A model generated the notes under the pieces. That model was not told where the DNA came from and ran no database searches. It worked only from the letters and a program-made list of their open reading frames with translations. Below are positions 7,775 through 62,609 of a stretch of 64,000 bases of DNA, piece by piece. Source of the DNA: Mustelus asterias. Taxonomy: Eukaryota. The stretch is taken from contig NC_135804.1 of the NCBI RefSeq assembly GCF_964213995.1, positions 69,378,001 to 69,442,000 of the forward strand. Direction: 5' to 3'. The translations under genes and the position numbers were made by a program. How positions within the stretch are numbered: position 1 is the stretch's first letter; every line of letters begins with the position of its first letter.

Positions 7775-8086
7775 CTGGGTTAGAACTAGATACCAGGTGA
7801 ACAGATAATTTCGGTGCTTGGAGCGTCCCATGAGACACCAAACAAATGTAAGGCGTTCCTATCTGGATTGGCTGTGACACCTGCAGAATGCTGGAGGCTT
7901 CATAGAGACCTGATTCGTTCAAGCGCTTTGTTGTTTTTATCCCGGTTGTAATCCTGCTTCCATTTTTGTACCAGTGAAAGGTAATAGCCGCCGGGTAAAA
8001 GTCAACTGTTTCGCACTCAAGATGAAGATAGGTGTTTGAATTTCCGTCAGACATTTTCCACTGTATAGTTGGTTCATGAGGAGAAG
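7775..8086 (-). CDS. Paralog B C1-set Ig exon
   Basis: atag|CT...AAC CCA G|gtaaga. Translates ASPHEPTIQWKMSDGNSNTYLHLECETVDFYPAAITFHWYKNG...GLYEASSIL...YICLVSHGTL, which has the C1 hallmarks C..FYP, W, and YxCxVxH. Confidence 0.9.
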
Positions 8087-9766
8087 CTATATTGGGGTTC
8101 AGGGAGAATTTCTCAGTGTTGAATATTTAGAGGATTATAACAATTTATAACCTAATCGCATGCGTATTCTTTAATTATTTTGGAGAAATTTTTATATAAT
8201 GGAACCTCTGCACTTTTTGAATTACCTAAGAACAGCCATATTTATTCGACTTTTTAAAAATGTCACAACCATCAAAACCAACATAGATTTTCTCATTCAG
8301 TGAATCAACTTCAAATGCATTTCGACTTGTTTAAACATTACGGCCTGAAAAGTATTCATTGCATAACAACATCATAAATTAAGTGTTCGTCTGTTTATAG
8401 TTCTGAGGATTATGTTAGCAATGTTGTTCAAAATATTTGCCGAACTGCGCTTCAATTACAACAACTTTGCCGCTCAGAAAAGGTTGCTGATTGTTTGGCA
8501 GTGTGACTTTAATTTGCAGGTGAATTTAAGGGAGACAATTTCTCTTTTGGAACATTGTAAGCTTAGTGAAAGCCCGAGATGCATTGAGGTACGGCCTTTA
8601 ACATTATCCACGTTGCACTATCGCCAACATTTCGATCTTCTCTGTCACGTTAAAGGCAATAGCAGTTCTGCCGCAAAAAAGCCAACTTGAATTGACTACA
8701 CTCTGACCTCACATGCTGAGATCTAATAGAACAGTAATCCTTATGCGTTGAACCATCATTCCAGTGAGGTCAATTGTTTAATCCTGGAATATTTCTGGAA
8801 TCACGCAACCGAATTGATTGTGTTGAAGCACGTTGGGTAGTTCACGGCAAATAGAAAGATCGGACAAGAACGGCCGTTCACGTCATTTCACTTGGGCGTT
8901 CTCACATTTTTGGACGTATAGCTTTACGAAGAATCCTCCCAAAATTATCCCCACAATGATTTAGAAAAAGTACCTCGAGTTCCGTGAAATAACACAATGA
9001 CATACAAGTATTATTGTTTTATAAAGGCGTTCACTGGATAATGTGAGTGATTAAATAGCGATTTACGGTAAACTAGAGAGGCAGGCCTGAGCAACGTAGC
9101 TCCTCCCAATTAAGTTTTAGTCAGAAAGTTCCTTACAGCTAATTAAGATTGAACCTTAAAATATGTATGCTCTTTTTATTATGAGGTCACTATCTAAGAA
9201 ATTTGATGCGTTGATAGTAATCGTACTTTTCAAGAGTGGGAGCATCCGAAAATACAGTTTGGAAGTGTTGGCAGATGTGTGTCTTCATTCGATATCCTAA
9301 GCATTAAATTTTAGGATTGCCAAAATGTATCAAGTATGATAATATTCTGGATAACGTACATGCAAAAGAAATATTTGGCGCTATTCAAATTATATCGGCA
9401 CAACTGGAGTCGAGCCTTATTCCACCATAAAACATGCAGCAGTTTAACTGGATATATTGTTAAATTACATACATGTAATAAATATATTCTATATACATAA
9501 ATACATACATACATATAATTATATATATATATGTATATCCCTTGTCATAATTACATTTCATGCTTTGAAAATATTAGCTGCCGTTTTTGTATGTAGTGAT
9601 AATTCAGAAATACGTAATTGAGGCGACAAAGGCCGAATGATCAAGAAATGCTTCAATAAGGCACAAATCATGCCATCGTGCTACTTTACTTTCCATTTCA
9701 AAGGTGTGTATATAAACATGTTTGAGAGAGGATTCCAAAAATTCCTTCCGCCACAATGACACTTAC

Positions 9767-10081
9767 CGTGGACAACAATTGTTGATCCAGTTCCGTTCGT
9801 CATTCTCGCTCTTCCTTTTTGGACCGCAGCAATAAACCCCGGCGTCTTGGAAACGGACATTAAGGAGCTGGAAGGAGCCTTGCCCTTTTCTCTTAAAAAA
9901 TGTTTCCGCCTGTCTGAGCTGGGTTGCATAAATACACTTTCGTCAAGTCTCCACCAGAAAATATTCACTTCGGAATTATCTGACGGAGGAGTGAACGCAC
10001 AAGCAATGGTAATATTTTCACCGATCTTAACAATCATGTGTCCGGGGCTTTGCGACACCTGGGACTGGGTATAGCAAATAA
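9767..10081 (-). CDS. Paralog B V-set exon (VJ-type) with an internal frameshifted segment
   Basis: ggaag|TT...GTC CAC G|gtaagt. VSQSP...NITIAC...IFWWRL...NGTGSTIVV is in the main frame, while GSFQLLNVRFQDAGVYCCG is in a shifted frame. Confidence 0.88.
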
Positions 10082-10211
10082 CTTCCAAAGAGAGGGATAA
10101 AACATATTATCAATCAATTCAACACTTCAGATCTAAATTGCAGAGTTTCATAGTTGAGTTGGAATACATACAAAGACTATTTTAAAAATAAAAATAAAAT
10201 GCAGCGGATAC

Positions 10212-10262
10212 CTGTCACGGTCATCACCAGGTTCAGTCTGCTCTGAAGAACAGCGAGAACAT
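10212..10262 (-). CDS. Paralog B leader-like exon (defective)
   Basis: Phase-1 donor GTG ACA G|gtatcc, 130 nt from the V acceptor, mirroring ACA G|gt in paralog A. The ATG at 10262 (MFSLFFRAD*) is out of frame with the donor. Confidence 0.5.
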
Positions 10263-11259
10263 TGATATTGGACAAAACAATAACGGTCTTCTGCGAATAA
10301 AGAAGTATCTGGAGAATTTATTGCGGCAACGCCGCAATTGACCTGTTGTAAAATAAGAAATGACGACGTGTGATGCCGCACGTTTTTCATTACACAGCAA
10401 GTTCTTAAATTTAATTTGCGGTTGTTCCTTTGAATTTTGAATGCTTTAAAGCATTGCGAACAGGATCATTAGTATTAACCAAAACAAACACCACACCGAT
10501 CTGCCCGATGTTCTGGATATCTATCGGTTAAATCTGTGTTGGATTTTAACACGGCTGAAGAAAATGGCTGCGCTCGACAAATAAATATCTTGAGGTTTTT
10601 CTTGGACGAACATTGACTGTTCAAAACAACAACAAAAAATCTTTCAGAAGGAGGTGATGCCAATGACCGCAATTAAAAAAAGAGAAAATAGTGTAAATTG
10701 CAGAAATATGATACCTAGCTGCGTCGGTAGATGTTTTGTTTTCTCTTTGCAGGAGCTGCCAGAACGACAACGCTTATGCGAGTTGGCTGGCGTTGCAGTA
10801 AATACCAGACATTATGAAGTAATTTAATTTTACTGCGTTTGAGATCTGTATTTCGTATTTTGCCCGTAGAATAGAACTTAAGAACGCATTCAGTTAATTC
10901 ATCTTATCATTGATAGGCAATTTGGATATTGCAGCCTGCTGCGCTATAGAATGAGATCAGTCGGTAATCTGACGGTGAAATTCATTTCACTTTCTTAACT
11001 GCACAGCGACCCACAATCCTCACCACCCGGAAGCTCTTGACTTCATTTGAAATCAAAAATCAAATTTAGCATTAAATAATTTCAATGACCAGTCCTTCTC
11101 TGCTCTCCAAGGTACATAATTCGAAAGAAAAACGATCCTCTGAGAGAAGAAATCGCCCATCAACTCTGTCTTTAATCAACTTTTCAAACCGGTTTTCCTG
11201 GTTGAGATTCTTTTAGTAAAGGAAACATTCTGGCAGCAGTTACCCTATGAAGCGACTTT

Positions 11260-30458: not shown

Positions 30459-30469
30459 CACCACTTTGC

Positions 30470-37959: not shown

Positions 37960-38140
37960 ATAGAACAAAGAAGAAAGAAGATTACATCACAGGAACAGGC
38001 CTTTTGGCCCTCCAAGCCTGCAGCGAACTCCCCTGGCAGCGAGTTCCAGGTACCCATCACCTTCAGCGTAAATAAACATGCCTCATGCCTCTCCTTTAAA
38101 CCTTGCACCTCACATCTTAAATCAATGCCCCCGAGTAATT
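37960..38140 (-). mobile_element. Internally deleted CR1 3' fragment inside a Harbinger intron
   Basis: ACAGGAACAGGCCTTTTGGCCCTCCAAGCCTG matches the CR1 tail at 17028-17060. Confidence 0.7.
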
Positions 38141-38307
38141 GCCTCAAATTGAGTGGAGGATGGACAGGTGCTCACTTCCTGAATCCACCCCAACCATGCT
38201 GTCACTGACAGCCTGGATGTCCCCTTCTGTGCATAGCTCCAGCGGCCACTCCTCAAAGGGGCTGACGACCCGGAGGTCACGCTCACCACCCCCTATCTTC
38301 GCCCTCT

Positions 38308-38586
38308 TTTTGATTTGATTTATTATTGTCACATGTATTAACACACAATGAAAAGTATTGTTTCTTGTGCACTATACAGACAAAACATACCGTTCATAGA
38401 GAGGGAAACAAGAGACTGCAGAGTGCAATGTTACAGTTATGGCTAGGATGTAGTTAAAGATCAACTTAATGCAAGGTAAGTCCATTCAAAAGTCTGACAG
38501 CAGTAGGGAAGAAGCTGTTTTTGAGTTGGTTGGTATATGAACTCAGACTTTTGTATCTTTTCCCCGAAGGAAGAAGGTGGAAGAGC
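38308..38586 (-). mobile_element. Rex1/Babar 3' fragment inserted in Myb exon 2
   Basis: FHLLPSGKRYKSL..LKNSFFPTAVRLLN and (TTTGA)n tail. Confidence 0.8.
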
Positions 38587-39846
38587 ATGTGATTGTCAGC
38601 CTTCTGTGGGGAGAGAAGGAGGCATGAGAGAAATGATGGTGTGACTCCTGCACAATATCGGAGGTGGCCAGCAGAGGGCATGCACAGTGATACTTTTTTG
38701 TGGGAGAAGGGGCGGGAGGAGGTGCTTGGGGGTCAGGGGCTGCAAGCATGCAAGGTGCTGGAGGTGAGGGGATCCGGGGATGAATTGGGGGAAGATGCTT
38801 GATGGGATAAAGCACTCACCCTTGCTGCCTGGGTGAGGTCATTGACGTTCTTTCTGCACTGCTTTCCTGTTCTGTTCTGGGGGCCAGTGCCATAGCACAA
38901 ACCGAGGTGGCAAATGCCTCCCAGGCCGTTTGCCCGTAACCCACCCTGGGTCTGCATTCTGCTGGGGGGATGAGGGTGTCCCGCCTCGCCTCTGCAGCAT
39001 CCAGCAACCTGCTGAGTTTGCCCTCTGTGAATCTTGACGCTGGCTTCTTGGACATCTTTTCCTGCACTGCCTGCCTGTTTGGACTTTTTATGGAGTTGCC
39101 GTTGTTATGGCGGATCTGCTGCAGGCAGTTTGAGAGAGTATTCCAGCAAGTTAAATGCAGTTTGCTTGTTAGAAATGAGGGGGAGGCAATTAGACAGAGA
39201 CTGGGGCCTTGTGTAGGTGGGTCTGGGGTGTGGGGAGAGGGGGGGGAGCTGCCACTCTCACTGCGATCAGTAGAGAGGTGGTGACACTCTGCCGGCAATC
39301 CGTGTGGGGAAGGGGATCGCTGCCACTCTGCATGCGATCGATAGTGGAGAAGGGGAACACTGCAATTCTGCCTGCAATCCAGTGTGGGGGAGCAGGACGC
39401 CATTGCCCTGAGTGGTGGTGGTGGCGGGGCGGGGGGGAGGTGGTGGAATAAGGTTGTCTGGAAGATTGTGGGGGTAGGGGGGAATCAATGTCCATGGGGT
39501 TAGGGGGAGGCATTATCTGGCCCCGGCAGGATGTCGCAGTGGAGAGCATTATTTTATTTTTGCGCATGCCCATTTGGATGCTCCGATCAGAGCTACAGGG
39601 CGTTGGGTGTGTCAAACAGGTTTCTGCAGCTAGAATCGTACTCGCTGATAATTTTGCAGGCAGAGTGCATATTGGGGGAGCGGGGGCGCGGGGGGGGGGG
39701 GGGGGGGGAGGCGGGGGGGGGGGGGGAGGTGCGACACACGGGCCCAATGGACGGATCTGAAATCCTCCTCGTCTCAAGTCCGCCAGGCCCTTAGACAAAA
39801 AACGGTAAATAGCGCCTTGCCTCTTTCTCACATATTTATTGAGATT

Positions 39847-41002
39847 AGGCTGCAATTTTGCCATCACGTTGCGTCCGTTTTCGAGTGCCAAAAAGTGGTA
39901 AAGTCGGGAGTGAGCCAATTGGCATGAGCTGTGCCCATTTTTATGTCAGTTCCCACTTTACCAGGGGAAAGAAATCATCAAGATCAGGAGCCCGCCCAAA
40001 ACGTGCGTGATGTCAACTTAAATATTTTTGCATTCATCTCAATGCGAGCTCCACTAGCGAGCTCCATGCCCCAATGTACCAGCCTACCTATTCTTACCAC
40101 TTTGTTTGCCCCAGCAGGATTTGTCTGGAAAACATCTCCCCTTTAAAAGTCGGCTTCTGGCGCTCCATCAGTGAGAGTTAATAAGGAGAGCCTCCTATCA
40201 GATAGCTCAGTGGTGCTCACAGAGGGTCATTTCGTGGCGGCCATGTTGCGTTTCGAGTCGGGAGGAGTTGACAAGAGTTGGGAGGGCGGGGATCTGTTGT
40301 TGTTCATGGTGTTCGATGTCCGGTTTTCAGTATACACTGGGGTCTCAGTACTGACCTCAGGTCTTGGCGATTCTGCTGGGTCCCAGTGCATGCTGCACTG
40401 TTGCAGCTGAGGGAATGTCCTGGAAACCCTTTGAAGTGGCAGTGCTGAAGCCTCAGGACTTCTCCAGCGGCACTGTCTGTAGTCACTACTGCATGGGTTC
40501 CGGGTGTATATTACAGGGTGTAGAATGGGGGCGCTGCCACCCTGTCCGTTATTGGCTGGGGTGGAGGAGGGGGCGGTGGTGCTGCCACTCTAACTGCGGT
40601 TGGTGGTGGGGAGGGCGTGATCGTTCTGGGTGGCAGGGGTTGGGGGATAAGTGGGCCAGTGATGTTGGGCGGGTTCGGGGGGGGGGGGCTCCATCCAATG
40701 TCTGCGGGGGCCAGGGCAAAGGTTTGCGGCCCGGGAGGGATCTGGCAGGGGAGCTATGTTATTTTATATTTTTTTCTGCGTATGGGCACTTAGAGGCTCC
40801 GATCGAAGCTGCAGGCTTTCGGCACCTTAAGCCCCGCCCACAGGTTTCTGCAGCGAGCAACTGACTCGCTGAAAATTTTGCAGCCAGAGTACATATGTTG
40901 GGGCCTCATAACGAACCCAAAAAACAAGTCTCCCAGTTCCACCCAGCCGGCGCTGAGACAAAAAGTGCTAAAATATCGCTCACAGTCAGAAAAATCAGGT
41001 TT
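39847..41002. mobile_element. Non-autonomous Harbinger derivative (both ends, no genes)
   Basis: The left part matches 33942-34150 (TGGTAAA..TCGGG, CGCCCAAAACGTGC, AAATATTT.TGCAT). The right part matches 39550-39680 (GCTCCGATC, CAGGTTTCTGCAGC, CTCGCTGA.AATTTTGCAG). Confidence 0.75.
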
Positions 41003-50388: not shown

Positions 50389-50443
50389 ATGTCTGTGCTC
50401 AATGTTGGTATTTTAATGCGGATCATGGCCATCTTTTGCACAG
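50389..50443 (+). CDS. Paralog A exon 1, signal peptide
   Basis: MSVLNVGILMRIMAIFCT, then G|gttgtt (weak donor, phase 1), 109 nt before the V exon. Confidence 0.65.
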
Positions 50444-53400
50444 GTTGTTTTATTTCTCCCTGTGTTGTTTGTTGCCCATGTCTGTTTGTTATCTTGTAAA
50501 CTGTACTGCTACTATGTGTCTTTCATACAATCATTATTCTGTTTTATGATAGCTGGCATTCGCGCTAATTTCCAAGTCTCTCAAGCTCCTGAAAACACGA
50601 ACGCTCTCTTGGGCACAAACGTCACCTTCTATTGCACATTCCCTATTTTTCAAAATGCCTTAAATGTGGAAGTTTACTGGTGGAAACTGGGTGAAAACGG
50701 ATTTCTGCACAGAAGTTCAGACAGCAGGAAGATATTTCTCCGCTTTAAGCAAGGGGGTGCCTCATTTCAGCTCCTGAATATCAGTGCCCGGGATGCCGGT
50801 GTGTATTACTGCGGTGTCAAAACTTTGGAAAACAGGACTGCAAATGGAACCGGCTCAACGATCAAAGTATCAGGTAGGTGACGTTCTGGCACGAAGAAAA
50901 GGAAAGCTCATAGATAGTGTGGTGTTGCCATTATTTTTTACATTAAAATTGTTTATATAATTTGGAAATTCAATCAAATTCTCTTGCCGGGTATGGGCAA
51001 CCTGACCGAAGCCTCCATTTGGAACAGACATAGCCACACCTATGTATTGTTTATGTTTTCAGGCAGGAGTAACATAGTTTAGTTCAGCGAACGTCGTTGT
51101 GTCAAGATATGTAGAGTCCTTGTTCCAGGTGTAGAGTTGAAAAGTGCCATACCTACTTGACATGATTTATTGGTTCTTACATAAGCAAACCTCAATTTCA
51201 TTTAGTGCCCCGGAAACTGATCGAACAATGCCCCTACTTTCGCGTTAAAATGAACGAGTAGCACTATCCGGATAAAAGCCATATCACAATTTCTTATAAA
51301 TGCATTGTTCCCTCAATAAATATTTGAACCGTCTAACAAACGTGTGAACCAAACGCGAGCCAAACATTTGATGAAGTCTGCACAAAATTAAATTTTACAA
51401 CTCTATGGAAGTCTTTAAGTTAGGAATGCTTAGAGTGGATTTTCGCAGTCCTTCTATGTTAAGAAACGATACCTTGCCAAAACTCAATTATACAAGGAAC
51501 TCAATTAACTATAACCAACATTTGACGAGAGCCAAAGTTCATTCAACGATAGCCTATGGCCCGGAATAGATATTGTTTTCACCATAGTTATGTCCCCATA
51601 GTACTATATATTCCGAATCAACAAGCTTTGATTATTGCCTATTTCAATTTGCTCAACAAGACCCTTTTTGAAGTCTTAACGACAAAGAATCTGTACAGAT
51701 CTCCCAACAATTGGAACTTGCAAAACATTATTTTGTTGAGACTGAATTTCCTTTTGCCAGTTACCTGTTGGCAAGAATATGGTAAGGGCTATGTTCCTCT
51801 TATTAATTACAAATTTGATTGTTGAAGTCATATGAATTGGCCGTTCATGGACTAAAAGGCTGCAGAGTGAGAGAAACATGCAACAGACAAGGGAGAGATT
51901 GGATCAATTATTCTTGCGCTGCATCTTTGTAAAGTATTTATTAGTCCTGATTCCCTGCAATTTCCCAATAACCCTCGAATCTATGTTCAAACACTGACAA
52001 ATATATTGGTAAATGATTTCCATGCAAGGAATACAAATTTGTTGCAGTTACTTAACGCTCAAGGAGATCACATCGGATAAAGTAAACGTAATTTGTGCAA
52101 TCAAGAGAAAACGAACCCATAAAATTATTCGTTTTTTTTATTTTGTACCCTTCGCAGTTCCACCAACTCCGTTGAAGATTTTTTCCAAAGTACATGAAGT
52201 AAACTCTTCTTTCCTTGATCTCCTGTGCGAAACCAGTGAGTTTTACCCAAACGTGCTGAATCTCAGTTGGTATAAAGATGGGATTGAGATCAGGAACTGC
52301 ACAGTGACAACCAAGTCATTGAACATAAATGGACTTTATAAAGTTTCAAGTATATTAAAGAGGATGCAACCTGTCAGGAGCACAACTGTTTACACCTGTC
52401 AGGTTTCTCACGTCACACTCCCTGTCCCAGCTAAAGTGGAATTTGCTCTTCTGAACCCCAAGCTAGGTAAGGACCAACATCGTTAACAACTCAATAAACT
52501 GGCGATACACTACTGTGCATTTACATTGTAATTTAACATTGATGGGGCACGACCTAGCTTCAAATACGTTTCAGACATGTAGCGTAGATTCGGAAGCAGT
52601 TCATAACTCCAACGTAAGCGAATGCAAACTCCAGCAAGTCGGCAGCTTTTCGTTGTAACTCGTTGATTCGCCAGGGAGCTTAAATACGTTACTCTACACA
52701 AGTTTAGAAAATTATGCTTTGTAATTAAGTATTTCAGAAATTGCAGCTGCACTCTCAAAGCCGAAATTGTACGTAACTTAGCAAAATAGTTTGTTTCTGA
52801 AAAAAGAGAATCTGCTGAATTATCTGGGATCCTCAATCGTTTAGTGGCAAAAACGCGAAACCCAAATTGACTATTGCAGTTGGATGATATTACCTCCTTA
52901 GTTTCTTATGTAGTGTGTTTTGTTTGTACTTTAGAAAGAATCGGACCTCTCAGGGACAAAAGAGGGGAATTATGCTTAGAACCAAAGGAAGTAGGAGAGA
53001 TCCTAAACTAATACTTTGCATCAGTATTCACAAAGGAGAGGGACATGTTGACTGGGAGTGTCTCAGAGCGATGTGTTGACCGTTAGAAAAAATCTTTAGA
53101 TCACCTTGAGCTCGTGACCCCTCGTGATCGTCACCTCCGACCTGGGAAAAAGCTTCCCACTGTTCACCCTATCTATCCCCTTCATAATCTTGTACACCTC
53201 CATTAGATCTCCCCTCATTCTCCGTCTTTTCAGGGAGAACAACCCCAGTTTACCCAATCTCTCCTCTGAGCTAAAACCCTCCATACATACATAGGATGCA
53301 TAAAATAATCATCTGGCCGTCAAAATAAAAGCATCAGTTTCCTTCCTAATTCGTGGCTTCCCCGCAAATGGACACAAATTAGTTTGATTGTCAACATTTA

Positions 53401-56400
53401 CTAGCGTGGAATAGTTTTGCTGCTTCTCCATCATTTTGAGCAATGCCGATGGTTAAACACGTTCCCATATTATGGTGCACCTGCCCACTTAAGTACCCAG
53501 ACACTAAGTTGACTGATTCCATTGCGACTAAACTGCATCTACTTCCCATCCCTCCTCCCCGCCCCCCCCCCCCCCCCCAAAAAAAAACAAAAATCCGCCT
53601 GGTGCTAAAAAAGCTTGAAAATCTTACACTTACTCACTGAATATGAGCTATTGATTTATTTTGTGAACACCACAGGCATAAAAACCGACATCTGTGGCAA
53701 TCTAAAGAGTAGAGCGGTCTTATTGAAAAAAATTGTTTGCAAATGCATTATAGCTACCACTTTCTCTGCGTTTTTCGACATTCGACCTTAGAAAAAAATC
53801 GCTCTAAATAATTTGTTCCATGAGGCTTTCCTTGTGTAACACACTATTCAGCCTCCCTAATCGAGTTGTCAGGAATCGTTTCTTTCACGTTCATAACGAT
53901 ACTTCGTTGCTGTGAAGCTAATTGAAAATTTGTTCCACATTTTCATCATTCTTCCTTTATTGCAGAGGACTGTTATGTGTGCCACTTTTCAATGCACGAG
54001 AGCCACTTCTCAGGGATAAATTTTCCTCAAATGTAATGGTCTTGTTTTGAACATATCCACGCACAAGTAAAAAACAAATGTTGTCATATGATCACCACTC
54101 TTCTCCATTAACTCACTTAAATAAGGCTCTGACCTGAATTTCATTTATTACCCGATGAGCAATCCAGCAAAGTCTGCTTCGAAAATCGTATCCCAACATA
54201 TTATTCTGGAAGTTTTTACTGAATGCATTCCATGAACTCGGTCTGAAATCTATATTTCCCACTTGCGTTTTCTGAACCAATTCATAAATAAAAGTCGCCC
54301 AAGAACATTATCGTTGTTATAAGGGCTTTTAAATGTGCGATATTGATCGCCCGAACCATTAAATTTGAAGTGAGCCGGTGTTTGAAAATACTTCTAACGT
54401 TGTGTTCTGACGCTTGCTTTTTCATCTATGCACCAACCCTGAACATAAATGTTTATCTCCTTAGTTTGTAACCATTCATATCGCTATTCTAAATAAACCT
54501 TCATTACCCGGAATACCGTACATTACTTCTTCTTTAAAAAAAACTATTACCCAGAAGTATTTCGTCTCCAAGTGCCCCGCTTTTAATTAGCGCTGCTAGA
54601 TGAAACAAGTATTATTTTATTTTTTAGTGTCGCTAGTCGGTTCACATTAACACTGCAATGAAGTTACTGTGAAAATCCTCGAGTCGCCACACTCCGGCTC
54701 CTGCTGGGGAACACTGAGGGAGAATTTAGCATGGCCAATGCACCTAACGGACGCGTCTTTCGGACTGTAGGAGGAAACTGGAGCACCCAAAAGAAACCCA
54801 CGCAGACACGGGGACAACATGCAATAAGTGTTCAAAGCGGGGAATTAAATCCGGGTCCCTGGTGCTGTGAGGCAGCAGTCCTAACCACTGTGCCACCGCA
54901 CCACACCAACTGTCCATTACGTTATCTATCTCTTAGGAACATTTGCTGATTTATCGGTGTTTCCTGACATGGAAATTGTCGCCATTAATCGAGTGACATT
55001 CAGAATCCTCCTGCCATTATCATAGAAACACTACAGTGCAAAAAAGACCATTCGGCCCACGGAGTCCACACCGGTGCTTTGACCAATTATCCCACCCAGG
55101 CTCTCGCCACTGCACTATCCATGTAATCCATACATTTATCTGGGATAAGCTATCCAATACCTAAAAAGTCACCTAACCTGCATATCTTTGCTCTGTGGGA
55201 GGAAACAGCAACGCCCGGCGGAAACCCATGGAGTTTTGCGGAGAATGTGTAAACGCCACACAGAGATCACCCAAGATCGAAATTGAACCCAGGTCCCTCT
55301 AACAGTTAGGCTAACGACTGTACCACTGTGCCACTGTGTCACACGGCTTTATCTATTCTACTTCAGTCATAATATAGCTAGATAGGATATTACTTACTTA
55401 ATATGGTGTCATTATTTTTCGTTGTCAATCAGGTGCTAAATTCCTGTTCAACTCTCAAGTTATTTATCGGAGTACAGCAGGTGCATTCATATTTCTACTG
55501 ATGATCGCCATCACTGGAAGCTCCTGTCACCAAAATAAAAAAGGTAAAAAAGGTCTTTATTCCAGAGTAACCTCAGGATCGTCAAATGTATGAAATTGAA
55601 TAATTTGAGTGAAAGCTAAAAAATGTATGACATTCGATTTGTAAAATGCAACCACGTTCATTTGTTAAGTCTAGTGCCTCGGGGAATTTATAAAGTATCC
55701 TCTCTATTTTGCTCCGTGGTAACCTAATTGAATTATATTTGCCTCACTTTGAGATGCAGTTTAAACAAAATTGTTACCTGGAACAGTATAAGTCAGGCAC
55801 TATGAAGCAGTTATTGTTCTTGTCGTCTGAGTCCTAAACTGTCTTTGCAGTTTTGTTACCATTATAGATGCGCCAAACGGGCGGTACGGTAGCACAATGA
55901 TTAGCACTGCTGCTTCACAGCGCCAGGGAGCTGGGTTCGATTCCTGGCTTGGGTCGCTAACTGTGTGAAGTTTGCGCGTTTTCCCAGTGTCTGCATGGAG
56001 TATCCCCCGGGTGCTCTGGTTTCCTCCCACATTCTGGAAGATGAGTTGATTAGGCGCATTGACCGAACAGGCGCCGGAATGTGGTGACTAGGAGAATTTT
56101 GCAGTAACTTCGTTGCAGCGTTCATGTCAGCGTCACTTGTGACTAATGAATGCAGTTTACATTATCATTTGATATATATTTGGAAAAAAAATCACCGCTC
56201 GTCCCACTGTTTTAGTCATTTATTGTAGGAGGATTGCGTTTCCAAATAATATTTTCATACCAATGCCCAAGTTTTTAATGGAATCAGCCAGATTGTCCTT
56301 CTTTAGAATTTTGCTGATCAATTGAAATTCATGGCGGAATAATACTTTAATTCCTTATCAGGAGTGTGCCGATATGTGGATACTTCAGAACTTCGTGAAC

Positions 56401-59400
56401 AGCAGGTAATTTCATGTCATCTTTTCTCATGTATGGTAAATAAAATAATAAATGATACGCCATTGAATCATTGCACTTAAACTCCACGTTGATCAAATGA
56501 ATTTTACATTTCTTTTTCTACTCACAAACGTTCACAAATATATGTAACCCTTGTTGTGAAAAGCCTGCACAGTGGCACAGTGGTTAGCACCGCTGCTTCA
56601 GCGCCAGGGCCTCGGGTTTCATTCTTGGTTTGGTTCACCGTCTGCGCCGAGTCTGCCAGTTCTCCTCGCGTCTGCGTGGGTTTCCTCCGGGTATTCCAAT
56701 TTCCTCCCACAGTCCAAAGGACGTGCTGGTTCGGTGTATTAGCAATGCTAAATTCTCCTTCAGTATATCCGAACAGGCGTCATTCTTGCGGCGACTGGGG
56801 AATTTTCACAGTAACTTCATTGCAGTGTTAATGCAAGTCCACTGTGACACTAAATAAAATGAAGAAACCGAGGAAACTGCAGTGTTCTGAAGAAATACAA
56901 CTCTAGTTCCAACGATAATGTGTGTACTGTATTTTTCGGAAGTGTATGCGTCGATCATGAACAGCGGAGACCAGTTATTGAAAGTTGTGCAGTTTCTTCT
57001 GTTGATGATTTTGCGAATATCAATGCATGAGTGGGTGCTCGGAATGTGCCACATCAGATTGCAGGCCAGAAACTGCATTGTCTCAGCTCAATGTAAAGAA
57101 AGTCTTCAGAGGGAGGTATCAGAAGTGATCGAAGCCACACTTCAGTCAGTTTCCTCAACAGCGGAAGTGAGATGCCCTGTAAATCAAACAGAATATATAA
57201 ATATTCCGGTGCGTATTGTCACAAATTGTCAAAATTCGACATCAACGTTTCAACTTTCCATCTAGTTTTTATATAATGTGGAAACCAGTTTAAAAACGGA
57301 TTTTATCTGTTCATCTGTGTATAGATAGAGCAGAGGATGAACTAATGTTTAAATTGCATTAGGCTCGAAGAGTTCCGCTATCTTCGAATCAAAGAATCCC
57401 TACAGTGTCGAAAGAGGCCATTCGCCTCATCAAGCCTAGTACGACCATAATCCCATCCAGACGGTATCCCTCTAATCCCACTTAATTATCCCCCTAATCT
57501 CCCTAATACTGAGGGACACTTTGCCATGGCCATTCCAGGTAACCTGCACATCTTTGGAATGTGCAAGGAAACTGGAACAATCGGAAGGAACTGACACAGG
57601 CAACGGAAAAACGTGCTAACTCCACATAGACAGTCACTCGCGGCTGGTTATAAACAGTAGAGTTAAACCGCTCGAGAAATGGACAGCGTTTGACAAAGCA
57701 CGGTGATAAACATAGCATAAACGTGCGTCAAAAGCCTATCTACGCTGTTCCATTAAGCGCGGTCCTTCCACCAAATTTTATATCAGCTATCTTATCCTTT
57801 CTTTTCGGGAAATTATTCAATTTTATAATTATGCATAAAGTGACCGAAAACTTTGAAATTAACAGAATCAAACCGCTGGATTATAGCAGCTAATAGCTGA
57901 CCAAAGTGATTGACACTTTTCCAGAAGTTGCTGAATGAGTGGAAAGAGAAATGCGGTGGCTGGTAGCTATATGGATTATCAAAACGCTTCTGATAATAAA
58001 AGGCATGAGCGACAATTGAACGAAAGTTAAATTTAATTACATAATTCCTACAATGCAGAAAGAGGCATTCCGCCCATCAGGTCGACACGAAAATCCGAAT
58101 AGAAGGCATTATACAGGCGTTTACATTCACTATGACTAAACCATCTAACCTACACATCTTGAGACACTCAGGGACAATTTCAGATGACCAATCTACTTAA
58201 CACACATGATAGAACCGTTAGCAGGAAACTGTAACACCCAGTGGAAACTCATGCAGACATGGGGAGAATGTATTTGATTTGATTTGATTCGTTATTGTCA
58301 CATGTATTAGCATACAGTGAAAAGTATTGTGTCTTGTGCACTAAACAGACAGAGCTTGGCATTCATCGAGAAGACAACGAGAAAGTGCTGAATGTAGAGT
58401 TACAGTCATTGTTAGGGTGTAAAGAAAGATCAACTTAATGCAAGGTAGGACCATTCAAAAGTCTGATGGCAGCAGGGAAGAAGCTGTTCTTGAGTCGGTT
58501 AGCACGTGACCTCAGACTTTTATATTTTTTTCCCGATGGAAGAAGGTGGAAGAGAGAATGTCCGGAGTGCATGGTGCCCTTAATTATGCTGGCTGCTTTG
58601 CCGAGACAGCAGGAAGTGTAGACAGAGTCAATGGATGGGAGGCTGGTTTGCTTGATGGATTGGGTTACATTCACAACCTTTTGTATTTTCTTGTGGCCTT
58701 GGGCAGAGCAGGAGCCATAGCAAGCTGTGGAAGGTGGTGGCAGTTGTAGCTGACATGCCAAATTTCCTTAGTCTTCCTTAGTCTTCTGAGAAAGTGGAGG
58801 CGTTGCTGGGCTTCCTTCACTATTGCGTCGGTACGGGAGGAACAGGACAGGTTGGTAGTGATCTGGACACCTGAAAATCTGAAACTCTTGACCCTTTCTA
58901 CTTCGTCCACATTGATATCGACAACGGCATATTCTCCTCTATGCTTTCTGAAGTTGATGAAAATCTGTTTCGCTCTGTTGACATTGAGGGAGAGATTGTT
59001 GTCGCCGCACCAGTTCACCAGTTTTGAGATGAATTTCATAGAAATAATGGTGTTGACGGCTGAGCTGTAGTCAATAAATAGGAGTCCAACATCGGTCTTT
59101 GTTATCTAGGTGTTCCAGGGATGAGTGCAGGGCCAGGGGGATGGCTCTGCTGTGGACCTGTTGCGGCAGTAGGCAAACTGTAGTGGATCCAGGCAGTCTG
59201 GGAGGCTGGAATTGATTCGTGCCATGACTCGCGTTTGAAACACTTCATAAAGATGGATGTCAGCTCTTGGATGATAGTCATTAAGGGACACTGCATGGCT
59301 TTTCATTGGTTCCGGGATGATGGTCGTCTTCGTGAAGCAGATAGGGACCTAAGATTATTGAAAGGAGAGTTTGAAGATGTCTCCGAATATCCCTGCCAGC

Positions 59401-61929
59401 TGATCACGCAGGACCTGACGGCTCGTCTGTGTACCCCATCGGACCAGTCGCTTTCTGTGGGTTGACCTTCGAGAACGCTGCTCTGACAGCGGCAATGATG
59501 ACCTCATGCACAGGTACATTCAAGACTTCAAGGGTGGAGGGCACGCTCTCAATGATCTCTTGCTCAAAACGGGCATAGAATACATTGAGCTCCTCAGGGA
59601 GGGGTGCGTAGGAGTCCGTGATTTTACATGCCTTCATCTTATAGCCTGTTATGTCTTGCAAACGTTGCCATCGTCGGCGGGGTTCTGTGTGGCTGGCCTG
59701 GGACTCTAGCTTGGTCTGGTACTGTCTTTTGGCATCATTGATGGATCTCCTTAGATCGTTTATGGCTTTCTTGTATAGGTCAGGGTCGCCTGACTTGAAT
59801 GCCTCAGACCGAGAGATAGCAGCCACACAAATGATCTGCCGAGGCTGGAATGGAACACGGTTCCCAGGCACTGGGAGGTAGCATTAAATGAAATTATTTA
59901 CATGCCATGCACATTTGCACAATGGTAGTCGACAGATATTAACAATAATCGGCAAACACTCCGATTGCCAGGTTATAACTGGTTTATTCTCGTAGGGCTA
60001 TGTTGAGACTTTGAAAATTCATGGGATTTATTCAAGACTTCATGAAATAGAACACCACACATTGAAATTTCTTGATGACACAAATATAGGACAGTACGTA
60101 GTCTCACAACACCAGGTTAAAGTCCAACAGGTTTATTTGGCATCACGAGCTTTGGGAACGCTGCTCTCTTTCACCAGTGGGGAGGAGCATTCACAAAGAC
60201 GGCATATATAGACAGTGACTCAATTGCAAGATAATGGTTGGAATGCGAGTCTTCAGAGTTAATCAAGTCTTTACAGGTACTGATAATGCGAATGGGGAGA
60301 GTGATAATTACAGATTAAAGAGGTGTGAATTGTCTCAAGCCAGGCCAGTGAGTAGGATTTTGCAAGCTCAGGCCAAATAGTGGGGGTTACATGTAGTGTG
60401 ACACGAACCCAAGATCCCGTTTGAGGCTGTCCTCATGCATGTGGAACTTGGCGGCTCGGGGATTCTGCATTGTCGTGTGTCACAAGGGATGAACGGACAC
60501 CATGCGAGAATCACCAGACAGGAATGTTCCCTTCCTGTCGGGGAACACGTCAGCAGCCAAAGACATTCAGTCTTCGATCTTCAGGAAAGCGTTCTCCAAG
60601 GCAGACTTCAAGACACATGATAACGCAGAATCCCCGAGCAGAAACTGATACCCAAGTTCACACACATGAAGACGGCTTCAACCATGCTCTTGGGTATATG
60701 TCACACTCCATGTAACCCCACCATTTGGCCTGGGCTTGCACAATCTGTGTGTGGAGTTGTGTGTGTCTGTGTGGAGTTTGCACATTCTCCTCGTGTCTGC
60801 ATGGGTTTCCTCCCGGTGCTCCGGTTTCCTCCCACAGTCCAAAGATACGCGGGTTAGGTTGATTGGCCATGCTAAATTTCCCCTTAGTGTCCTGAGATAC
60901 GTAGGTTGGAGAGATTAGTGGCTAAAATATGTAGGGATATGGAGGTAGGGCCTGGGTGGAATTGTGGTCCGTGCAGACTCGATGGGCCGAATGGCCTCCT
61001 TCTGTACTGTAGGGATTCTATGAATTCTATGAATAATCCTACTAACTGTCCTGGCTTGAGACAATTCACATCTCTTTAACCTGTGAATATCCCTCTCTCC
61101 ACTCGCATTGTTTCTTCCTGCAAAGACTAGATTGTCTGTAAAGACTTGTATTCCAAGCATTCTCTTGCAATTGAGTCTCTGTCAATACATGCCGTCTTTG
61201 TGAACCCACCTCCCCACTCACCTGATGAAGTGGAAGCGCTCCGAAAGCCCGTGATACCAAATAAACCTGTGTTGTGAGACTTCTTACTGTACCCAGCTCA
61301 GTCCAACGCCAGCATCTCCACATCCAAAACATAGGAGTTATTCTAAACCTATTCAAGGAAAGAAGGAAAGGCTTGAAGAGCTGCGCTATTTCATCCGTTT
61401 GGAGAGATATTCTGGGGGCACGGCGACATTGTCTAAAAAACATAGAGCTACAAATTGCATGAGTGGAATTAGGAACAAATTCTAGAGGGAGGGAAAAGTT
61501 CTAACCTTTGCGGGATTGCTTACAAACACGCTGATTGGTTTTGTTCGAATTGTTCCCCGAAACAATGTATTAATAGATTCGTGCCACGTGTGTAAATTCA
61601 AGGGCGACAGAGTCACGAGGCGCTAAATGATTCGCCCCTGTTCCAATGTTCCCATGTATGTTATTTTCACTCTTTTTGAAAGAACATTGATGCAATTTTG
61701 CTGGCAGATAAATAAAATAATGAGCTAACAACATTCTCCATCGTTGACTTCACAGATGGAACAACTCACCACTGATAACAAGCTGGCCTATGCTTCTCTT
61801 GATCTGAGTGGCTTCAAGCAAACTCGGAACCCGAAATCTAATGAGGCAAATACAGAACATGCTCAGCTTAGTACAACGATGCCAAGCAGAGCAATAGAGG
61901 TTATCTACACAGATTCCAGAATCGCATAA
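50389..61929 (+). CDS. Paralog A: V(J)-C1-TM-ITIM Ig-superfamily receptor, SIRP/NCR3-like, 337 aa; join(50389-50443,50553-50873,52158-52466,55433-55543,56362-56405,61756-61929)
   Basis: All introns are GT-AG with phases 1,1,1,1,0. The exons total 1014 nt and are open from ATG to TAA. Confidence 0.82.
50553..50873 (+). CDS. Paralog A exon 2, V-set domain with germline J-like strand
   Basis: tgatag|CT...TCA G|gtaggt. FQVSQAP...NVTFYC...VYWWKL...ASFQLLNISARDAGVYYCGV...ANGTGSTIKVS. Confidence 0.93.
52158..52466 (+). CDS. Paralog A exon 3, C1-set domain
   Basis: cgcag|TT...CTA G|gtaagg. LLCETSEFYPNVLNLSWYKDG...GLYKVSSIL...YTCQVSHVTL. Confidence 0.93.
52930..53290. mobile_element. Two abutting CR1 fragments in opposite orientation
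   Basis: 52930-53095 (+) ERIGPLRDKRGELC linker; 53096-53286 (-) LGLFSLKRRRMRGDLMEVYKIM. Confidence 0.75.
54625..54902 (-). mobile_element. tRNA-derived SINE
   Basis: Reverse complement GCGGTGGCACAGTGGTTAGGACTGCTGCCTCACAGC head; tail as in the 2611 copy. Confidence 0.8.
55018..55335 (-). mobile_element. Old HE1-like SINE
   Basis: Degenerate TGTGGGAGGAAAC core and CATTCGGCCCA tail. Confidence 0.65.
55433..55543 (+). CDS. Paralog A exon 4, stalk and transmembrane segment
   Basis: tcaatcag|GT...AAA G|gtaaaa. GAKFLFNSQVIYRSTAGAFIFLLMIAITGSSCHQNKK. Below the ORF-track length cut-off. Confidence 0.78.
55879..56155 (+). mobile_element. tRNA-derived SINE
   Basis: GGTAGCACAATGATTAGC A-box, GGTTCGATTCC B-box, shared tail. 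Confidence 0.8.
56362..56405 (+). CDS. Paralog A exon 5, short cytoplasmic exon
   Basis: ttccttatcag|GA...CAG CAG|gtaatt. GVCRYVDTSELREQQ. Converts phase 1 to phase 0, as the last exon requires. Confidence 0.62.
56566..56860 (+). mobile_element. tRNA-derived SINE
   Basis: GTGGCACAGTGGTTAGCAC head and CACAGTAACTTCATTGCAGTGTTAATG tail. Confidence 0.8.
58272..59815 (-). mobile_element. Rex1/Babar-type LINE fragment
   Basis: AFKSGDPDLYKKA, LNDYHP, LDPLQFAYCRNRST, WCGDNNLSLNV, AQQRLHFLRRL, and (ATTTG)n tail. Confidence 0.88.
60746..61033 (+). mobile_element. HE1-like SINE inserted in the Penelope arm
   Basis: GTGGAGTTTGCACATTCTCC...GACTCGATGGGCCGAATGGCC(ATTCTATG)n. Confidence 0.82.
61218..61254 (+). 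ncRNA. Degenerate minimal hammerhead motif (a further degenerate copy lies on the - strand at about 60143-60180)
   Basis: TCAC-CTGATGA-A-GTGGAAGCGCTCC-GAAA-GC-CC-GTGA. Stem I is TCAC/GTGA; stem II and U16.1 are damaged. Confidence 0.6.
61756..61929 (+). CDS. Paralog A exon 6, cytoplasmic tail with ITIM
   Basis: cttcacag|ATG. MEQLTTDNKLAYASLDLSGFKQTRNPKSNEANTEHAQLSTTMPSRAIEVIYTDSRIA*. LAYASL fits the ITIM consensus. Confidence 0.8.
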   Translation: MEQLTTDNKLAYASLDLSGFKQTRNPKSNEANTEHAQLSTTMPSRAIEVIYTDSRIA

Positions 61930-62609
61930 CATTGATTCGTCGTGTGGCAACCAATTTAATGTTCCTCTTCATGTCATTTCTCTCTTAAGCATTCTGGAGA
62001 AAACAATCTGCAGCTGTAAAAATGATGACTTGAAAAGTCGCTGAAGACGCTTTTTCAATTTCAGTTCTGGCCGCTTATCAACATTTACAAATAATGCTTT
62101 CCTTGTAACGATCTTCGTTTCTTTTTTTCGCTGGTCCGCGTCCTACGGGAATAGCACTTATTCCCTCATTTCAAACTGAGTTATTTACGATTGTTATTGC
62201 GTTTTACTGATCTGCTAATCGTTATGATGATGCAACATATTTCGGAAGGTGCTGACTTATCAACGTGAAGCTGTGACAGTCACGCACAGAGCACTTTCGA
62301 AAATTGTGCAATTTGCTTTTGAGAAAAGGTAAATGTAAGGAAGCCTTTATCAGAAGCAGAAGTGAAAAAAACAAATAAACCGATCATCACGCAATTCTGT
62401 CCGTCAATAATTCTATATTTTCGGCGATAATTCATTGTCGTGAATGTTAACTTAAACTTATTCTAAACCAGACCAAAGAAACCATTGATAATATTATACA
62501 AGAGATAGAATAGTGTGATGCGCAGTAAGAAAAACAGATTATGTTAATTGTTCCAGGAACGTACATTTTACAATTTCACCAAGTATGGCAGGTGAGAACC
62601 TATGACAGG

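What the first reader, a model, noticed from the sequence alone, without database searches (positions are those of the whole stretch)
50389..61929. Complete non-rearranging, antigen-receptor-shaped (VJ-C1-TM) inhibitory receptor hidden across six exons
Seen: six phase-matched exons give a 337-aa protein with a leader, one V domain whose J-like strand (ANGTGSTIKVS) is in the same exon, one true C1-set domain, a TM segment and an ITIM tail. Three of the exons are invisible in the ORF track, and I found no RSS next to the V. Known: C1-set domains are largely restricted to Ig/TCR, MHC/b2m, tapasin, SIRP and B7-like molecules; mammalian SIRPalpha is V-C1-C1 and NKp30 is a single VJ-type V with an NGT-containing G strand. 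Inference: this is a V-C1 receptor with an NKp30-like V and a SIRP-like tail, the architecture proposed for the pre-RAG ancestor of TCR/IgL chains, and may belong to a poorly characterised cartilaginous-fish multigene family.
Basis: partly seen in the sequence, partly recalled or inferred. Interest (0 to 1): 0.85.

Follow-up and report, generated by a model that had tools for sequence, protein, structure and literature searches.

The report
Shark V-C1 receptor gene with ITIM
This is a real, spliced shark gene for a membrane receptor built like an antibody light chain (one variable plus one constant domain) with an inhibitory-type tail; it belongs to a large, poorly named family found only in sharks, rays and chimaeras.

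Summary
Six GT-AG exons on the + strand (50389-61929) encode 337 aa: split leader, one V exon that includes the J-like strand, one C1-set exon, a TM exon and two tail exons with one canonical ITIM (LAYASL). The product equals RefSeq XP_078066431.1 of Mustelus asterias, auto-named 'immunoglobulin lambda-1 light chain-like', so pipelines already see it.

Spliced contigs of one public run show the V-C1 and C1-TM junctions directly. Depth arithmetic supports leader-V and TM-exon 5. No RSS was found.

The gene belongs to a multigene family found only in cartilaginous fish: 46 of 46 and 54 of 57 database hits. It has one orthologue in each of three other sharks (clade support 100/100). The family mixes ITIM-tailed and short-tailed members.

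Sequence profiles match Ig light chains, UrIg2 and SIRP-alpha about equally, and structure also matches B7-type V-C1 ectodomains. The link to NKp30 is weak. The gene fails the domain-count criteria of SIRP, NCR3 and UrIg/UrIg2. Inhibitory signalling is inferred, not shown.

The scan's first readers noted similar VJ-C1 genes elsewhere in this genome: 5 kb past the window, 10.6 Mb upstream and on other pieces. I found no paper on the family, but key papers were not held.

The parts
50389..50443 (+). Exon 1: start codon and most of the signal peptide (split leader); donor CAG|gt, phase 1
   Evidence: Sequence read; splice table. P0001 residues 1-19 map here. The depth of run X3 in bin 50410-50609 (1.23) equals 91 covered letters at depth 2.7, i.e. 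V-exon letters plus the leader letters inside the laid stretch.
50553..50873 (+). Exon 2: V-set domain with the J-like G strand (ANGTGSTIKVS) in the same exon; phase 1 to 1
   Evidence: Pfam V-set E 1.6e-7 and Ig_3 E 3.7e-8. 100% match to P0001 residues 20-125. X3 contig record 17 lies on 50551-50870 and runs on at 52155.
52158..52466 (+). Exon 3: C1-set constant domain (VYTCQVSH motif); phase 1 to 1
   Evidence: Pfam C1-set E 8.2e-12. The first and best-scoring stretch of the top PDB hit (2rcj_C residues 125-202, 28.5 bits; the entry is titled IgA1 heavy chain) reads like an Ig lambda constant region, which is my recognition of the printed residues. X3 records 17 and 18 join it to exon 2 and exon 4.
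55433..55543 (+). Exon 4: stalk, transmembrane segment (STAGAFIFLLMIAITGSSC) and basic stop-transfer residues; phase 1 to 1
   Evidence: Sequence; hydropathy scan. X3 record 18 lies on 52249-52464 and then on 55431-55541.
56362..56405 (+). Exon 5: short cytoplasmic exon (G)VCRYVDTSELREQQ; phase 1 to 0
   Evidence: Sequence. P0001 residues 266-281 map here. The Scyliorhinus torazame orthologue P0162 has GACRYVENTEHHEKQ at the same place. X3 depth 0.64 in bin 56210-56409 equals 46 letters at depth 2.8.
61756..61929 (+). Exon 6 coding part: ITIM LAYASL, then NTEHAQL and VIYTDS, then stop TAA
   Evidence: Sequence. P0001 residues 280-337 map here.
61930..62394 (+). Inferred 3' UTR, with AATAAA at 62374
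   Evidence: polyA signal found. The length of X3 record 18 (1010 nt) equals 216+111+44+639, which would end near 62394. This is an inference.
7779..10266 (-). Neighbouring paralogue, head-to-head with this gene: leader 10266-10213, V 10100-9756, C1 8087-7779. It equals P0024 (XP_078066426.1). Its TM and tail exons were not found in the window.
   Evidence: tblastn. The C1 exon matches P0024 at 99%. The V exon matches in two reading frames.

Best explanation
This is an intact, transcribed gene of the starry smooth-hound (Mustelus asterias). It encodes a type I membrane protein with a signal peptide, one germline-joined V(J) domain, one C1-set domain, a transmembrane segment and a cytoplasmic tail of about 80 aa.

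The gene is one conserved lineage of a large family that occurs only in cartilaginous fish. The family is built on the same leader-VJ-C1-TM plan and is scattered under inconsistent automatic names. It contains many members with one to several ITIM or ITSM-like tyrosine motifs, and also short-tailed members.

The most likely working model has three steps:
1. The V domain binds a still unknown ligand through its loops.
2. The C1 domain acts as a spacer or a pairing surface.
3. Tyrosine phosphorylation of the ITIM (LAYASL) recruits SH2 phosphatases, so the receptor dampens activation of the cell that carries it. This is how SIRP-alpha works.

Shown here: the gene structure, the domain types, four of five junctions, family membership and orthology. 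Inferred: membrane topology, the inhibitory function, the ligand-binding mode and the cell type.
For: - Exons, phases and GT-AG sites.
- Domain types: Pfam V-set and C1-set.
- Identity with XP_078066431.1.
- Splicing: contigs of run X3 with no mismatches to the window join V to C1 (record 17) and C1 to TM (record 18). X3 has no depth in most intron bins, and its depth fits the leader exon and exon 5.
- Family: 46 of 46 hits and 54 of 57 hits are from sharks, rays or chimaera. Scores fall from 206 to 64 bits at the first non-chondrichthyan hit.
- Conserved V, J-like and C1 motifs and modular tyrosine tails.
- Orthology: Mustelus, S. torazame, Heterodontus and Heptranchias form one clade with 100/100 support.
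- Family census: of 92 V+C1 models, 39 have a TM plus an ITIM tail and 22 have short tails.
- SIRP-alpha signals through ITIMs that bind SHP-1 and SHP-2 (PMC2785349, introduction as shown in the outline).
Against: - Only one canonical ITIM is left. The family's TEY motif reads TEH here, and the distal motif VIYTDS lacks the hydrophobic +3 residue.
- An Arg sits at the outer edge of the TM segment. It is not conserved in the orthologues.
- All 5 listed exonic differences between the window and runs X1/X2 change the amino acid. That fits relaxed constraint as well as diversifying selection.
- Run X3 is not on record as RNA. I infer that from its exon-only coverage.
- The exon 5 to exon 6 junction, the tissue, the cell type, the ligand and phosphatase binding are all unknown.
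Confidence: 0.7

Rival explanations
1. The family is the cartilaginous-fish counterpart (co-orthologues) of the SIRP genes, and this gene is a SIRP-alpha-like receptor that has one C1 domain fewer.
For: - 23 of the 54 chondrichthyan hits carry automatic SIRP-alpha, -beta or -gamma-like names.
- The family profile matches SIRP-alpha 2wng_A over V and the first C1 in one stretch (profile 25-215, chain 4-205, E 5.1e-31) and also SIRP-gamma 4i2x_E.
- The family mixes ITIM-tailed and short-tailed members, as SIRPs do.
Against: - The gene has one C1 domain, not two.
- The few longer models repeat near-identical segments and look like fused or duplicated models.
- Ig light chains and UrIg2 score as high or higher with the same profile.
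- No SIRP of a bony vertebrate appeared.
- SIRP-alpha is not among the 50 structural matches shown.
- The tail resemblance is recalled, not tested.
Confidence: 0.2
2. It is a member of the shark NCR3 (NKp30) family that has kept a C1 domain.
For: - The G strand has an NGT sequon in a GxG context.
- A frog protein named NCR3 aligns end to end with the V exon at 28% identity (E 1e-7).
Against: - NCR3 is described as a VJ-domain gene (PMC12227049, section 7), and here a C1 exon is spliced in.
- The frog NCR3 ranks 134 of the 150 listed.
- No NKp30 chain is in the best 60 PDB matches.
- No protein named NCR3 (the receptor) and no nurse-shark protein is among the family hits, although nurse-shark NCR3 entries exist (accessions named in PMC12227049).
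- First readers of this scan noted NKp30-like loci on other pieces of the genome (unchecked).
Confidence: 0.08
3. It is a B7/butyrophilin-like V-C1 ligand rather than a receptor.
For: - Among two-domain structural matches the best are 4zso_E (Z 15.5, 193 aligned; by its residue numbers probably B7-H6), PD-L2 (Z 14.9, rmsd 2.5), B7-H3, butyrophilins and PD-L1.
- Some family members are auto-named NCR3LG1-like or CD276 homolog.
Against: - All Z values of the 50 rows lie between 13.5 and 15.5, so they are effectively tied.
- Sequence profiles favour Ig light chains, UrIg2 and SIRP.
- The conserved J-like NGTGSxLxV strand and the repeated tyrosine motifs in the tails point to a signalling receptor.
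Confidence: 0.08
4. It is one chain of a germline-encoded, TCR-like dimer, pairing through C1 with the product of the head-to-head neighbour or with itself.
For: [quoted passage not shown]
- Two family genes lie head to head 40 kb apart in the window.
- Many family members have a conserved Cys at the outer edge of the TM segment (GC in the consensus).
Against: - This gene has Ser, not Cys, at that place.
- No pairing was modelled or measured.
- The neighbour's V exon matches its protein in two frames.
Confidence: 0.1
5. The gene is losing its function: a transcribed but decaying family member.
For: - The second tyrosine motif is lost (TEH for TEY), the distal motif is weakened and an Arg sits at the TM edge.
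- 5 of 5 listed exonic variants are non-synonymous.
- Pseudogenised relatives lie nearby according to first readers' notes.
Against: - The 337-codon frame is intact with canonical splice sites.
- Spliced transcripts exist.
- All structural residues of both Ig domains are kept.
- An orthologue is retained in four shark species.
Confidence: 0.08

Closest known systems
SIRP-alpha / SIRP family
   Same: An N-terminal V domain is followed by a C1-set domain, a TM segment and a tail with ITIM-type tyrosines. The family has both long-tailed and short-tailed members. Profile match to 2wng_A over V-C1, E 5.1e-31.
   Different: One C1 domain instead of two. No detectable orthology to bony-vertebrate SIRPs. 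Only one canonical ITIM in this gene. Ligand unknown.
Ig light chains and TCR chains
   Same: V, J-like strand and C1 are collinear. One-stretch profile alignments give 74.0 bits (lambda) and 72.4 bits (kappa). The 46 Foldseek rows printed are chains of Fab or antibody entries. The leader is split and the introns are phase 1.
   Different: V and J lie in one exon, there is no RSS and no rearrangement. The protein has its own TM segment and a signalling tail.
UrIg2 and UrIg (non-rearranging shark antigen-receptor-like genes, PMC12227049)
   Same: Single-exon VJ, split leader and C1-type domains in cartilaginous fish. UrIg2 was likewise auto-annotated as an IgL chain. UrIg2 9dmx_A is the second-best PDB match of the family profile (128.9 bits, summed over three stretches).
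   Different: UrIg has three C domains and is secreted. UrIg2 has nine or more C domains. Here there is one C1 and an ITIM tail. This family also occurs in the chimaera Callorhinchus, whereas the paper speaks of elasmobranchs.
NKp30 / NCR3
   Same: A germline VJ-type V domain with an NGT sequon in the G strand. 28% identity to V domains of a frog protein named NCR3.
   Different: NKp30 has no C domain. The sequence affinity is low.
B7 family (B7-H6, PD-L1/2, B7-H3, butyrophilins)
   Same: The V-C1 two-domain ectodomain has similar geometry (Z 14-15.5).
   Different: The family here has a J-like strand and tyrosine-motif tails. Sequence profiles favour Ig, UrIg2 and SIRP.
PRARP (chicken non-rearranging IgSF genes, Fu et al. 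2019)
   Same: [quoted passage not shown]
   Different: I could not compare them. The paper was not held and no PRARP sequence was at hand. No bird protein was seen among the proteins whose names I looked up.

Membership tests
Unnamed chondrichthyan VJ-C1-TM family | Shared V motifs (YWWK, DSGVYYC, NGTGSxLxV), shared C1 motifs (VPPTPL, FYPE, LTWYKNG, GLYEVSS, VYTCxVSH) and the leader-V-C1-TM plan | tested here: met
   Alignment A1 of 33 members. P0001 scores 386 bits against the family profile. The tree places it in a 4-species clade with 100/100 support.
SIRP | Three IgSF domains: V followed by two C1-set domains (PMC2785349 abstract) | tested here: not met
   One V-set and one C1-set exon. 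The orthologues P0162 and P0157 likewise have one C1.
SIRP | Cytoplasmic ITIMs that bind SHP-1/SHP-2 (SIRP-alpha) | tested here: inconclusive
   One canonical ITIM, LAYASL, is present. Phosphatase binding cannot be tested here.
SIRP | Sequence orthology to SIRP genes of other vertebrates | tested here: inconclusive
   2wng_A scores E 5.1e-31, but Ig light chains and UrIg2 score as high or higher. No bony-vertebrate SIRP appeared.
SIRP | Binds CD47 | not testable with these tools
   No binding assay is available.
NCR3 / NKp30 | A single VJ-type V domain without a C domain | tested here: not met
   A C1 exon is present and spliced into the transcript. NCR3 is called a VJ-domain gene in PMC12227049, section 7.
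NCR3 / NKp30 | V-domain sequence affinity to NKp30 | tested here: inconclusive
   Frog NCR3 aligns at 28% identity, E 1e-7, and ranks 134 of 150. No NKp30 chain is among the best 60 PDB matches.
NCR3 / NKp30 | Linkage to the MHC | not tested
The eight MHC notes listed by the scan are on other pieces (8 of 59 shown).
UrIg / UrIg2 | VJ followed by three (UrIg) or nine or more (UrIg2) C1-type domains (PMC12227049, sections 4 and 7) | tested here: not met
   There is one C1 exon between the V and TM exons, and the transcript contig joins C1 directly to TM.
UrIg / UrIg2 | Single-exon VJ with a split leader | tested here: met
Rearranging Ig/TCR | Separate V and J segments flanked by recombination signal sequences | tested here: not met
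   V and the J-like strand share one exon. There are 0 heptamer-spacer-nonamer matches in the window.
Rearranging Ig/TCR | Collinear V-J-C1 similarity | tested here: met
   One-stretch alignments with lambda (74.0 bits) and kappa (72.4 bits) chains, including the J region. The Foldseek rows printed are chains of Fab or antibody entries.
B7 / butyrophilin | V plus C1-like ectodomain acting as a ligand of CD28- or NKp30-type receptors | tested here: inconclusive
   Structural Z values of 14-15.5 are tied with Ig, MHC and TCR domains. Function was not tested.
PRARP | Non-rearranging V-C-TM genes of birds and other non-mammals (known to me only from the title and from recall) | not testable with these tools
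   The paper was not held and no sequence was available.

The most novel reading that the evidence does not exclude
The family to which this gene belongs may be a third, so far undescribed lineage of non-rearranging antigen-receptor-like (VJ-C1) genes, alongside UrIg and UrIg2. It is membrane-bound, signals through tyrosine motifs, comes in ITIM-tailed and short-tailed forms, and is kept in sharks, rays and also chimaeras. It would then be either the long-sought cartilaginous-fish root of the SIRP genes or a relic close to the single-C1, membrane-bound receptor that the RAG transposon split. Head-to-head gene pairs might encode TCR-like dimers.
Probability: 0.25. Interest if true: 0.75.

Novelty: new variant of a known kind. 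Interest (0 to 1): 0.45.

Why it matters
Receptors that combine a germline-joined V(J) domain with a true C1 domain are rare, and they sit at the centre of the debate on how antibodies and T-cell receptors arose. SIRP-alpha, UrIg and UrIg2 have each been put forward as links to the precursor (PMC2785349; PMC12227049).

This gene shows that cartilaginous fish also keep a large family of one-V, one-C1 membrane receptors with inhibitory-type tails. Automatic annotation scatters that family under at least six unrelated names.

A proper name and phylogeny would clean up shark genome annotation. They would also add a membrane-bound, signalling candidate to the comparison of antigen-receptor relatives, and would give a possible paired inhibitory/activating receptor system to study in the oldest jawed vertebrates. 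The single gene on its own is one ordinary member of that family.

Tried and rejected
- **Alternative fifth exon.** I first took 57165-57211 (reading ...NQTEYINIP) as exon 5, because it has splice-like edges and an ITSM-like motif. I rejected it. The RefSeq product uses 56362-56405, the S. torazame orthologue has the matching peptide, and the X3 depth fits that exon.
- **TM scan.** A hydropathy threshold of 2.2 found nothing. A threshold of 1.7 found the TM exon.
- **ESM Atlas on the V exon** gave only generic V-set clusters.
- **Single-sequence and V-only profile searches of the PDB** were dominated by multi-Ig adhesion proteins and pIgR. They did not single out any receptor family.
- **Structure searches.** Foldseek was saturated by Fab chains. 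The VIA wide search gave tied Z values.
- **Longer family models.** Pfam on P0049, P0064 and P0159, taken with their sequences, showed repeated near-identical segments rather than a real V-C1-C1 plan.
- **Other long ORFs of the window** gave one reverse transcriptase and otherwise no Pfam family.
- **Literature searches.** Searches found no paper on a V-C1-ITIM or SIRP-like family of cartilaginous fish in the held library. This does not show that the family is unpublished, because the papers below were not held.
- **Papers not held:**
  - Fu 2019, PRARP
  - UrIg 2023, PMC10530332
  - Flajnik 2012, PMC3709836
  - Kinlein 2021, shark NCR3, PMC8273117
  - Ohta and Flajnik 2015, PMC4594805
- **Supplements.** I did not open any. 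The supplementary gene tables of PMC12227049 and PMC10751288 may list this family.


Full report
**Observation.** On the + strand between 50389 and 61929 there are six exons, all with canonical splice sites.

| Exon | Coordinates | Length (nt) | Content |
|---|---|---|---|
| E1 | 50389-50443 | 55 | leader |
| E2 | 50553-50873 | 321 | V domain |
| E3 | 52158-52466 | 309 | C1 domain |
| E4 | 55433-55543 | 111 | TM segment |
| E5 | 56362-56405 | 44 | tail |
| E6 | 61756-61929 | 174 | tail and stop |

- The coordinates come from the sequences read and the table. For E5 that table was two to three bases off, and I corrected it by hand.
- The exons sum to 1014 nt, which is 337 codons plus the stop. 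The intron phases are 1,1,1,1,0, the usual pattern of Ig-superfamily genes.
- Pfam calls E2 a V-set domain (E 1.6e-7, 31.9 bits against a cut-off of 26). It calls E3 a C1-set domain (E 8.2e-12, 45.7 bits against 21), with C2-set far behind at 4.1e-4.
- The J-like strand ANGTGSTIKVS lies in the V exon, directly after the YYC motif and an 11-residue loop.
- A heptamer-spacer-nonamer search of the whole window found nothing. The only heptamer between 50301 and 52600 lies inside the C1 exon.

**The gene is already predicted.**
- A search of the V exon against 1.84 billion representative proteins returned P0001, 337 aa, 100% identical over the exon.
- P0001 is XP_078066431.1, 'immunoglobulin lambda-1 light chain-like [Mustelus asterias]', on a contig of 152.9 Mb.
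- Laid back on the window by tblastn, P0001 falls into six pieces that cover residues 1-337.
- I had first picked another fifth exon (57165-57211). The public model, the orthologue and the read depth all argue against it.

**Expression.** The look-up of sequencing runs found four runs of one study. None is on record as RNA. I laid all four on window:50410-56409.
- Runs X1 and X2 cover exons and introns alike, so they look like DNA. They differ from the window by about 2%.
- Run X3 has no depth in most intron bins, apart from repeats. It holds two contigs without any mismatch.
- Record 17 (510 nt) lies on 50551-50870 and runs on at 52155-52251.
- Record 18 (1010 nt) lies on 52249-52464 and runs on at 55431-55541.
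- With the two or three ambiguous letters at each joint, these are the junctions 50873|52158 and 52466|55433.
- The X3 depth of 1.23 in bin 50410-50609 equals 91 letters at depth 2.7. That is the V-exon letters plus the leader letters inside the stretch.
- The X3 depth of 0.64 in bin 56210-56409 equals 46 letters at depth 2.8, which is exon 5.
- The 683 letters of record 18 beyond the TM exon equal 44 + 639. That would end near 62394, twenty bases after the AATAAA at 62374.
- In total, two junctions are seen directly, two are supported by arithmetic, and the last one was outside the 6000 letters allowed.
- Run X4, from the same sample as X3, holds contigs that run from exons into introns, so they are unspliced.

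**Family.**
- With the Heptranchias relative P0007 as query, 46 of 46 hits at E <= 1e-5 came from sharks, rays or the chimaera Callorhinchus.
- With a profile of 33 relatives (A1), 54 of 57 hits were chondrichthyan. Scores fell from 206 bits to 64 bits at the first other hit, a catfish 'CD22-like' protein.
- I looked up names for twenty top hits (P0001 among them), and all twenty were chondrichthyan.
- The automatic names of the 54 hits are inconsistent:

| Automatic name | Hits |
|---|---|
| SIRP-alpha-like | 19 |
| SIRP-beta- or gamma-like | 4 |
| tapasin-related-like | 10 |
| Ig lambda-like | 4 |
| NCR3LG1-like | 4 |
| CD276 homolog | 3 |
| uncharacterised | 10 |

- The alignment shows the family signature: YWWK, DSGVYYC and NGTGSxLxV in V, and VPPTPL, FYPE, LTWYKNG, GLYEVSS and VYTCxVSH in C1.
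- The tails are built of repeated modules with tyrosine motifs of ITIM and ITSM type.
- Of 92 V+C1 models under 430 aa that I held, 39 have a TM segment and at least one ITIM. A further 12 have long tails without a canonical ITIM, 22 have tails under 45 aa (11 of them with a charged residue in or near the TM core), and 19 have no TM. These are gene models and isoforms, so the counts are rough.
- In a maximum-likelihood tree of 63 V-C1 ectodomains, the window's gene pairs with S. torazame P0162 (99/96). Together with Heterodontus P0003 and Heptranchias P0157 it forms a one-per-species clade (100/100).
- The window's second family gene, on the minus strand, is P0024. It has its own orthologues (100/100). 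Its leader is at 10266-10213, V at 10100-9756 and C1 at 8087-7779.

**Tail of this gene.**
- Compared with its orthologues, it keeps the exon 5 peptide and the ITIM (LAYASL against LTYVSL and LTYAAF).
- It reads NTEHAQL where both orthologues have NTEYA.
- It ends in VIYTDS where S. torazame has INYTDV.
- The Arg at the outer edge of the TM segment is not shared by the orthologues.
- The case for inhibition therefore rests on one motif.

**What it resembles.** By sequence, the family profile finds:
- an Ig lambda chain, in one stretch through V, J and C1 (74.0 bits);
- a kappa chain (72.4 bits);
- shark UrIg2 9dmx_A (54.8 + 29.8 + 39.6 bits);
- SIRP-alpha 2wng_A (111.3 bits, best stretch 25-215 on chain residues 4-205);
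- SIRP-gamma.

For the V domain alone, the closest relatives outside the family are multi-V proteins of turtles, lizards and snakes named 'pIgR-like' or 'titin-like', and further down a frog protein named NCR3. No NKp30 or SIRP chain is among the best 60 PDB matches of the V exon or of a V-only profile.

By structure, I folded the orthologue P0162 with alignment A3, not the window's joined product.
- The model has mean pLDDT 78.5 and pTM 0.60, and both Ig domains are mostly above pLDDT 90.
- All 46 Foldseek rows printed (ranks 1-50) are chains of Fab or antibody entries, aligned over 212-223 columns.
- The search over cluster representatives gives tied Z values of 13.5-15.5 for B7-type V-C1 ectodomains, MHC class II and Ig or IgNAR C1 domains, IgNAR and TCR V domains, and UrIg2.
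- The fold confirms 'V plus true C1' but does not choose a family.

**Comparison with the literature.**
- SIRP-alpha has a V and two C1 domains and ITIMs that bind SHP-1/2, and it was proposed as a link to the antigen-receptor precursor (PMC2785349: abstract, introduction and section 16 read).
- UrIg (VJ plus three C, secreted) and UrIg2 (VJ plus nine or more C, TM) are the current candidates from sharks. UrIg2 was also found because it was auto-annotated as an IgL chain (PMC12227049: sections 4, 7 and 13 read).
- PRARP and NKp30 are named as other VJ genes (PMC10751288: passages read).
- This gene fails the domain-count criterion of SIRP, NCR3 and UrIg/UrIg2, and the RSS criterion of Ig/TCR.
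- I file it as a variant of the known kind 'non-rearranging VJ-C1 receptor', in a family of its own.
- Eight library searches found no description of the family. Five directly relevant papers were not held and the supplements were not opened, so I do not claim that it is unpublished.

**Limits.**
- The joined spliced model was not used as a query anywhere. I searched exon by exon and used natural relatives for full-length searches and for the fold.
- The one exception to tell is the name look-up of the public protein P0001.
- The resemblance of the tail modules to the SIRP-alpha tail is recalled and was not tested.

**Verdict.** It is one member of a large VJ-C1-TM receptor family specific to cartilaginous fish. 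That family is annotated only automatically and is, as far as I could see, uncharacterised. It is probably an inhibitory receptor. The family, rather than this single gene, is the interesting object.

Noticed in passing
window 9756-10100 (- strand): The V exon of the neighbouring paralogue matches its RefSeq protein P0024 in two reading frames: 72% over 10100-9756 plus 86% over 9900-9814 in another frame. The C1 exon matches at 99%.
   Followed up: partly
window 57165-57211 (+ strand): A short open stretch reading ...CPVNQTEYINIP has an ITSM-like tyrosine motif, a polypyrimidine-AG before it and GT after it. It may be a decayed or alternative tail module. There is no evidence that it is used.
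   Followed up: partly
window 50553, 50790, 52360, 52445, 52464: All five listed exonic differences between the window and the DNA-like runs X1/X2 change the amino acid (A>V, R>P, K>N, A>T, L>Q). A contig of run X4 carries only one of them. The locus therefore seems to have at least three haplotypes in two samples.
   Followed up: partly
window 52810-53409, 54610-55009, 55810-56209: Stretches in introns 3 and 4 have summed contig depths in the hundreds of thousands to millions in all four runs. They are very abundant interspersed repeats, and many false joints arise between them.
   Followed up: no
window 58671-59871 (- strand) and 4071-5264 (+ strand): Reverse-transcriptase-like ORFs. The first lies in the last intron of the gene. 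The second is an RVT_1 match with E 8e-28.
   Followed up: partly
window 29400-40900: A G+C-rich block (0.53-0.57) holds several long ORFs of 165-350 aa on both strands. None of the seven scanned matches a Pfam family.
   Followed up: partly
proteins P0049, P0064, P0159 (other species): RefSeq models of family members in Scyliorhinus canicula, Amblyraja radiata and Callorhinchus milii repeat near-identical C1, TM-tail or V-C1 segments. These are either fused neighbouring genes or very recent exon duplications.
   Followed up: no
proteins P0002, P0004, P0019, P0084, P0089, P0132: The nearest V-domain relatives outside the family are multi-V proteins of turtles, lizards and snakes under names such as pIgR-like, titin-like or CEACAM1-like. 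At least four of them (P0019, P0084, P0089, P0132) have ITIM tails. This looks like a reptile receptor family that is also badly named.
   Followed up: no
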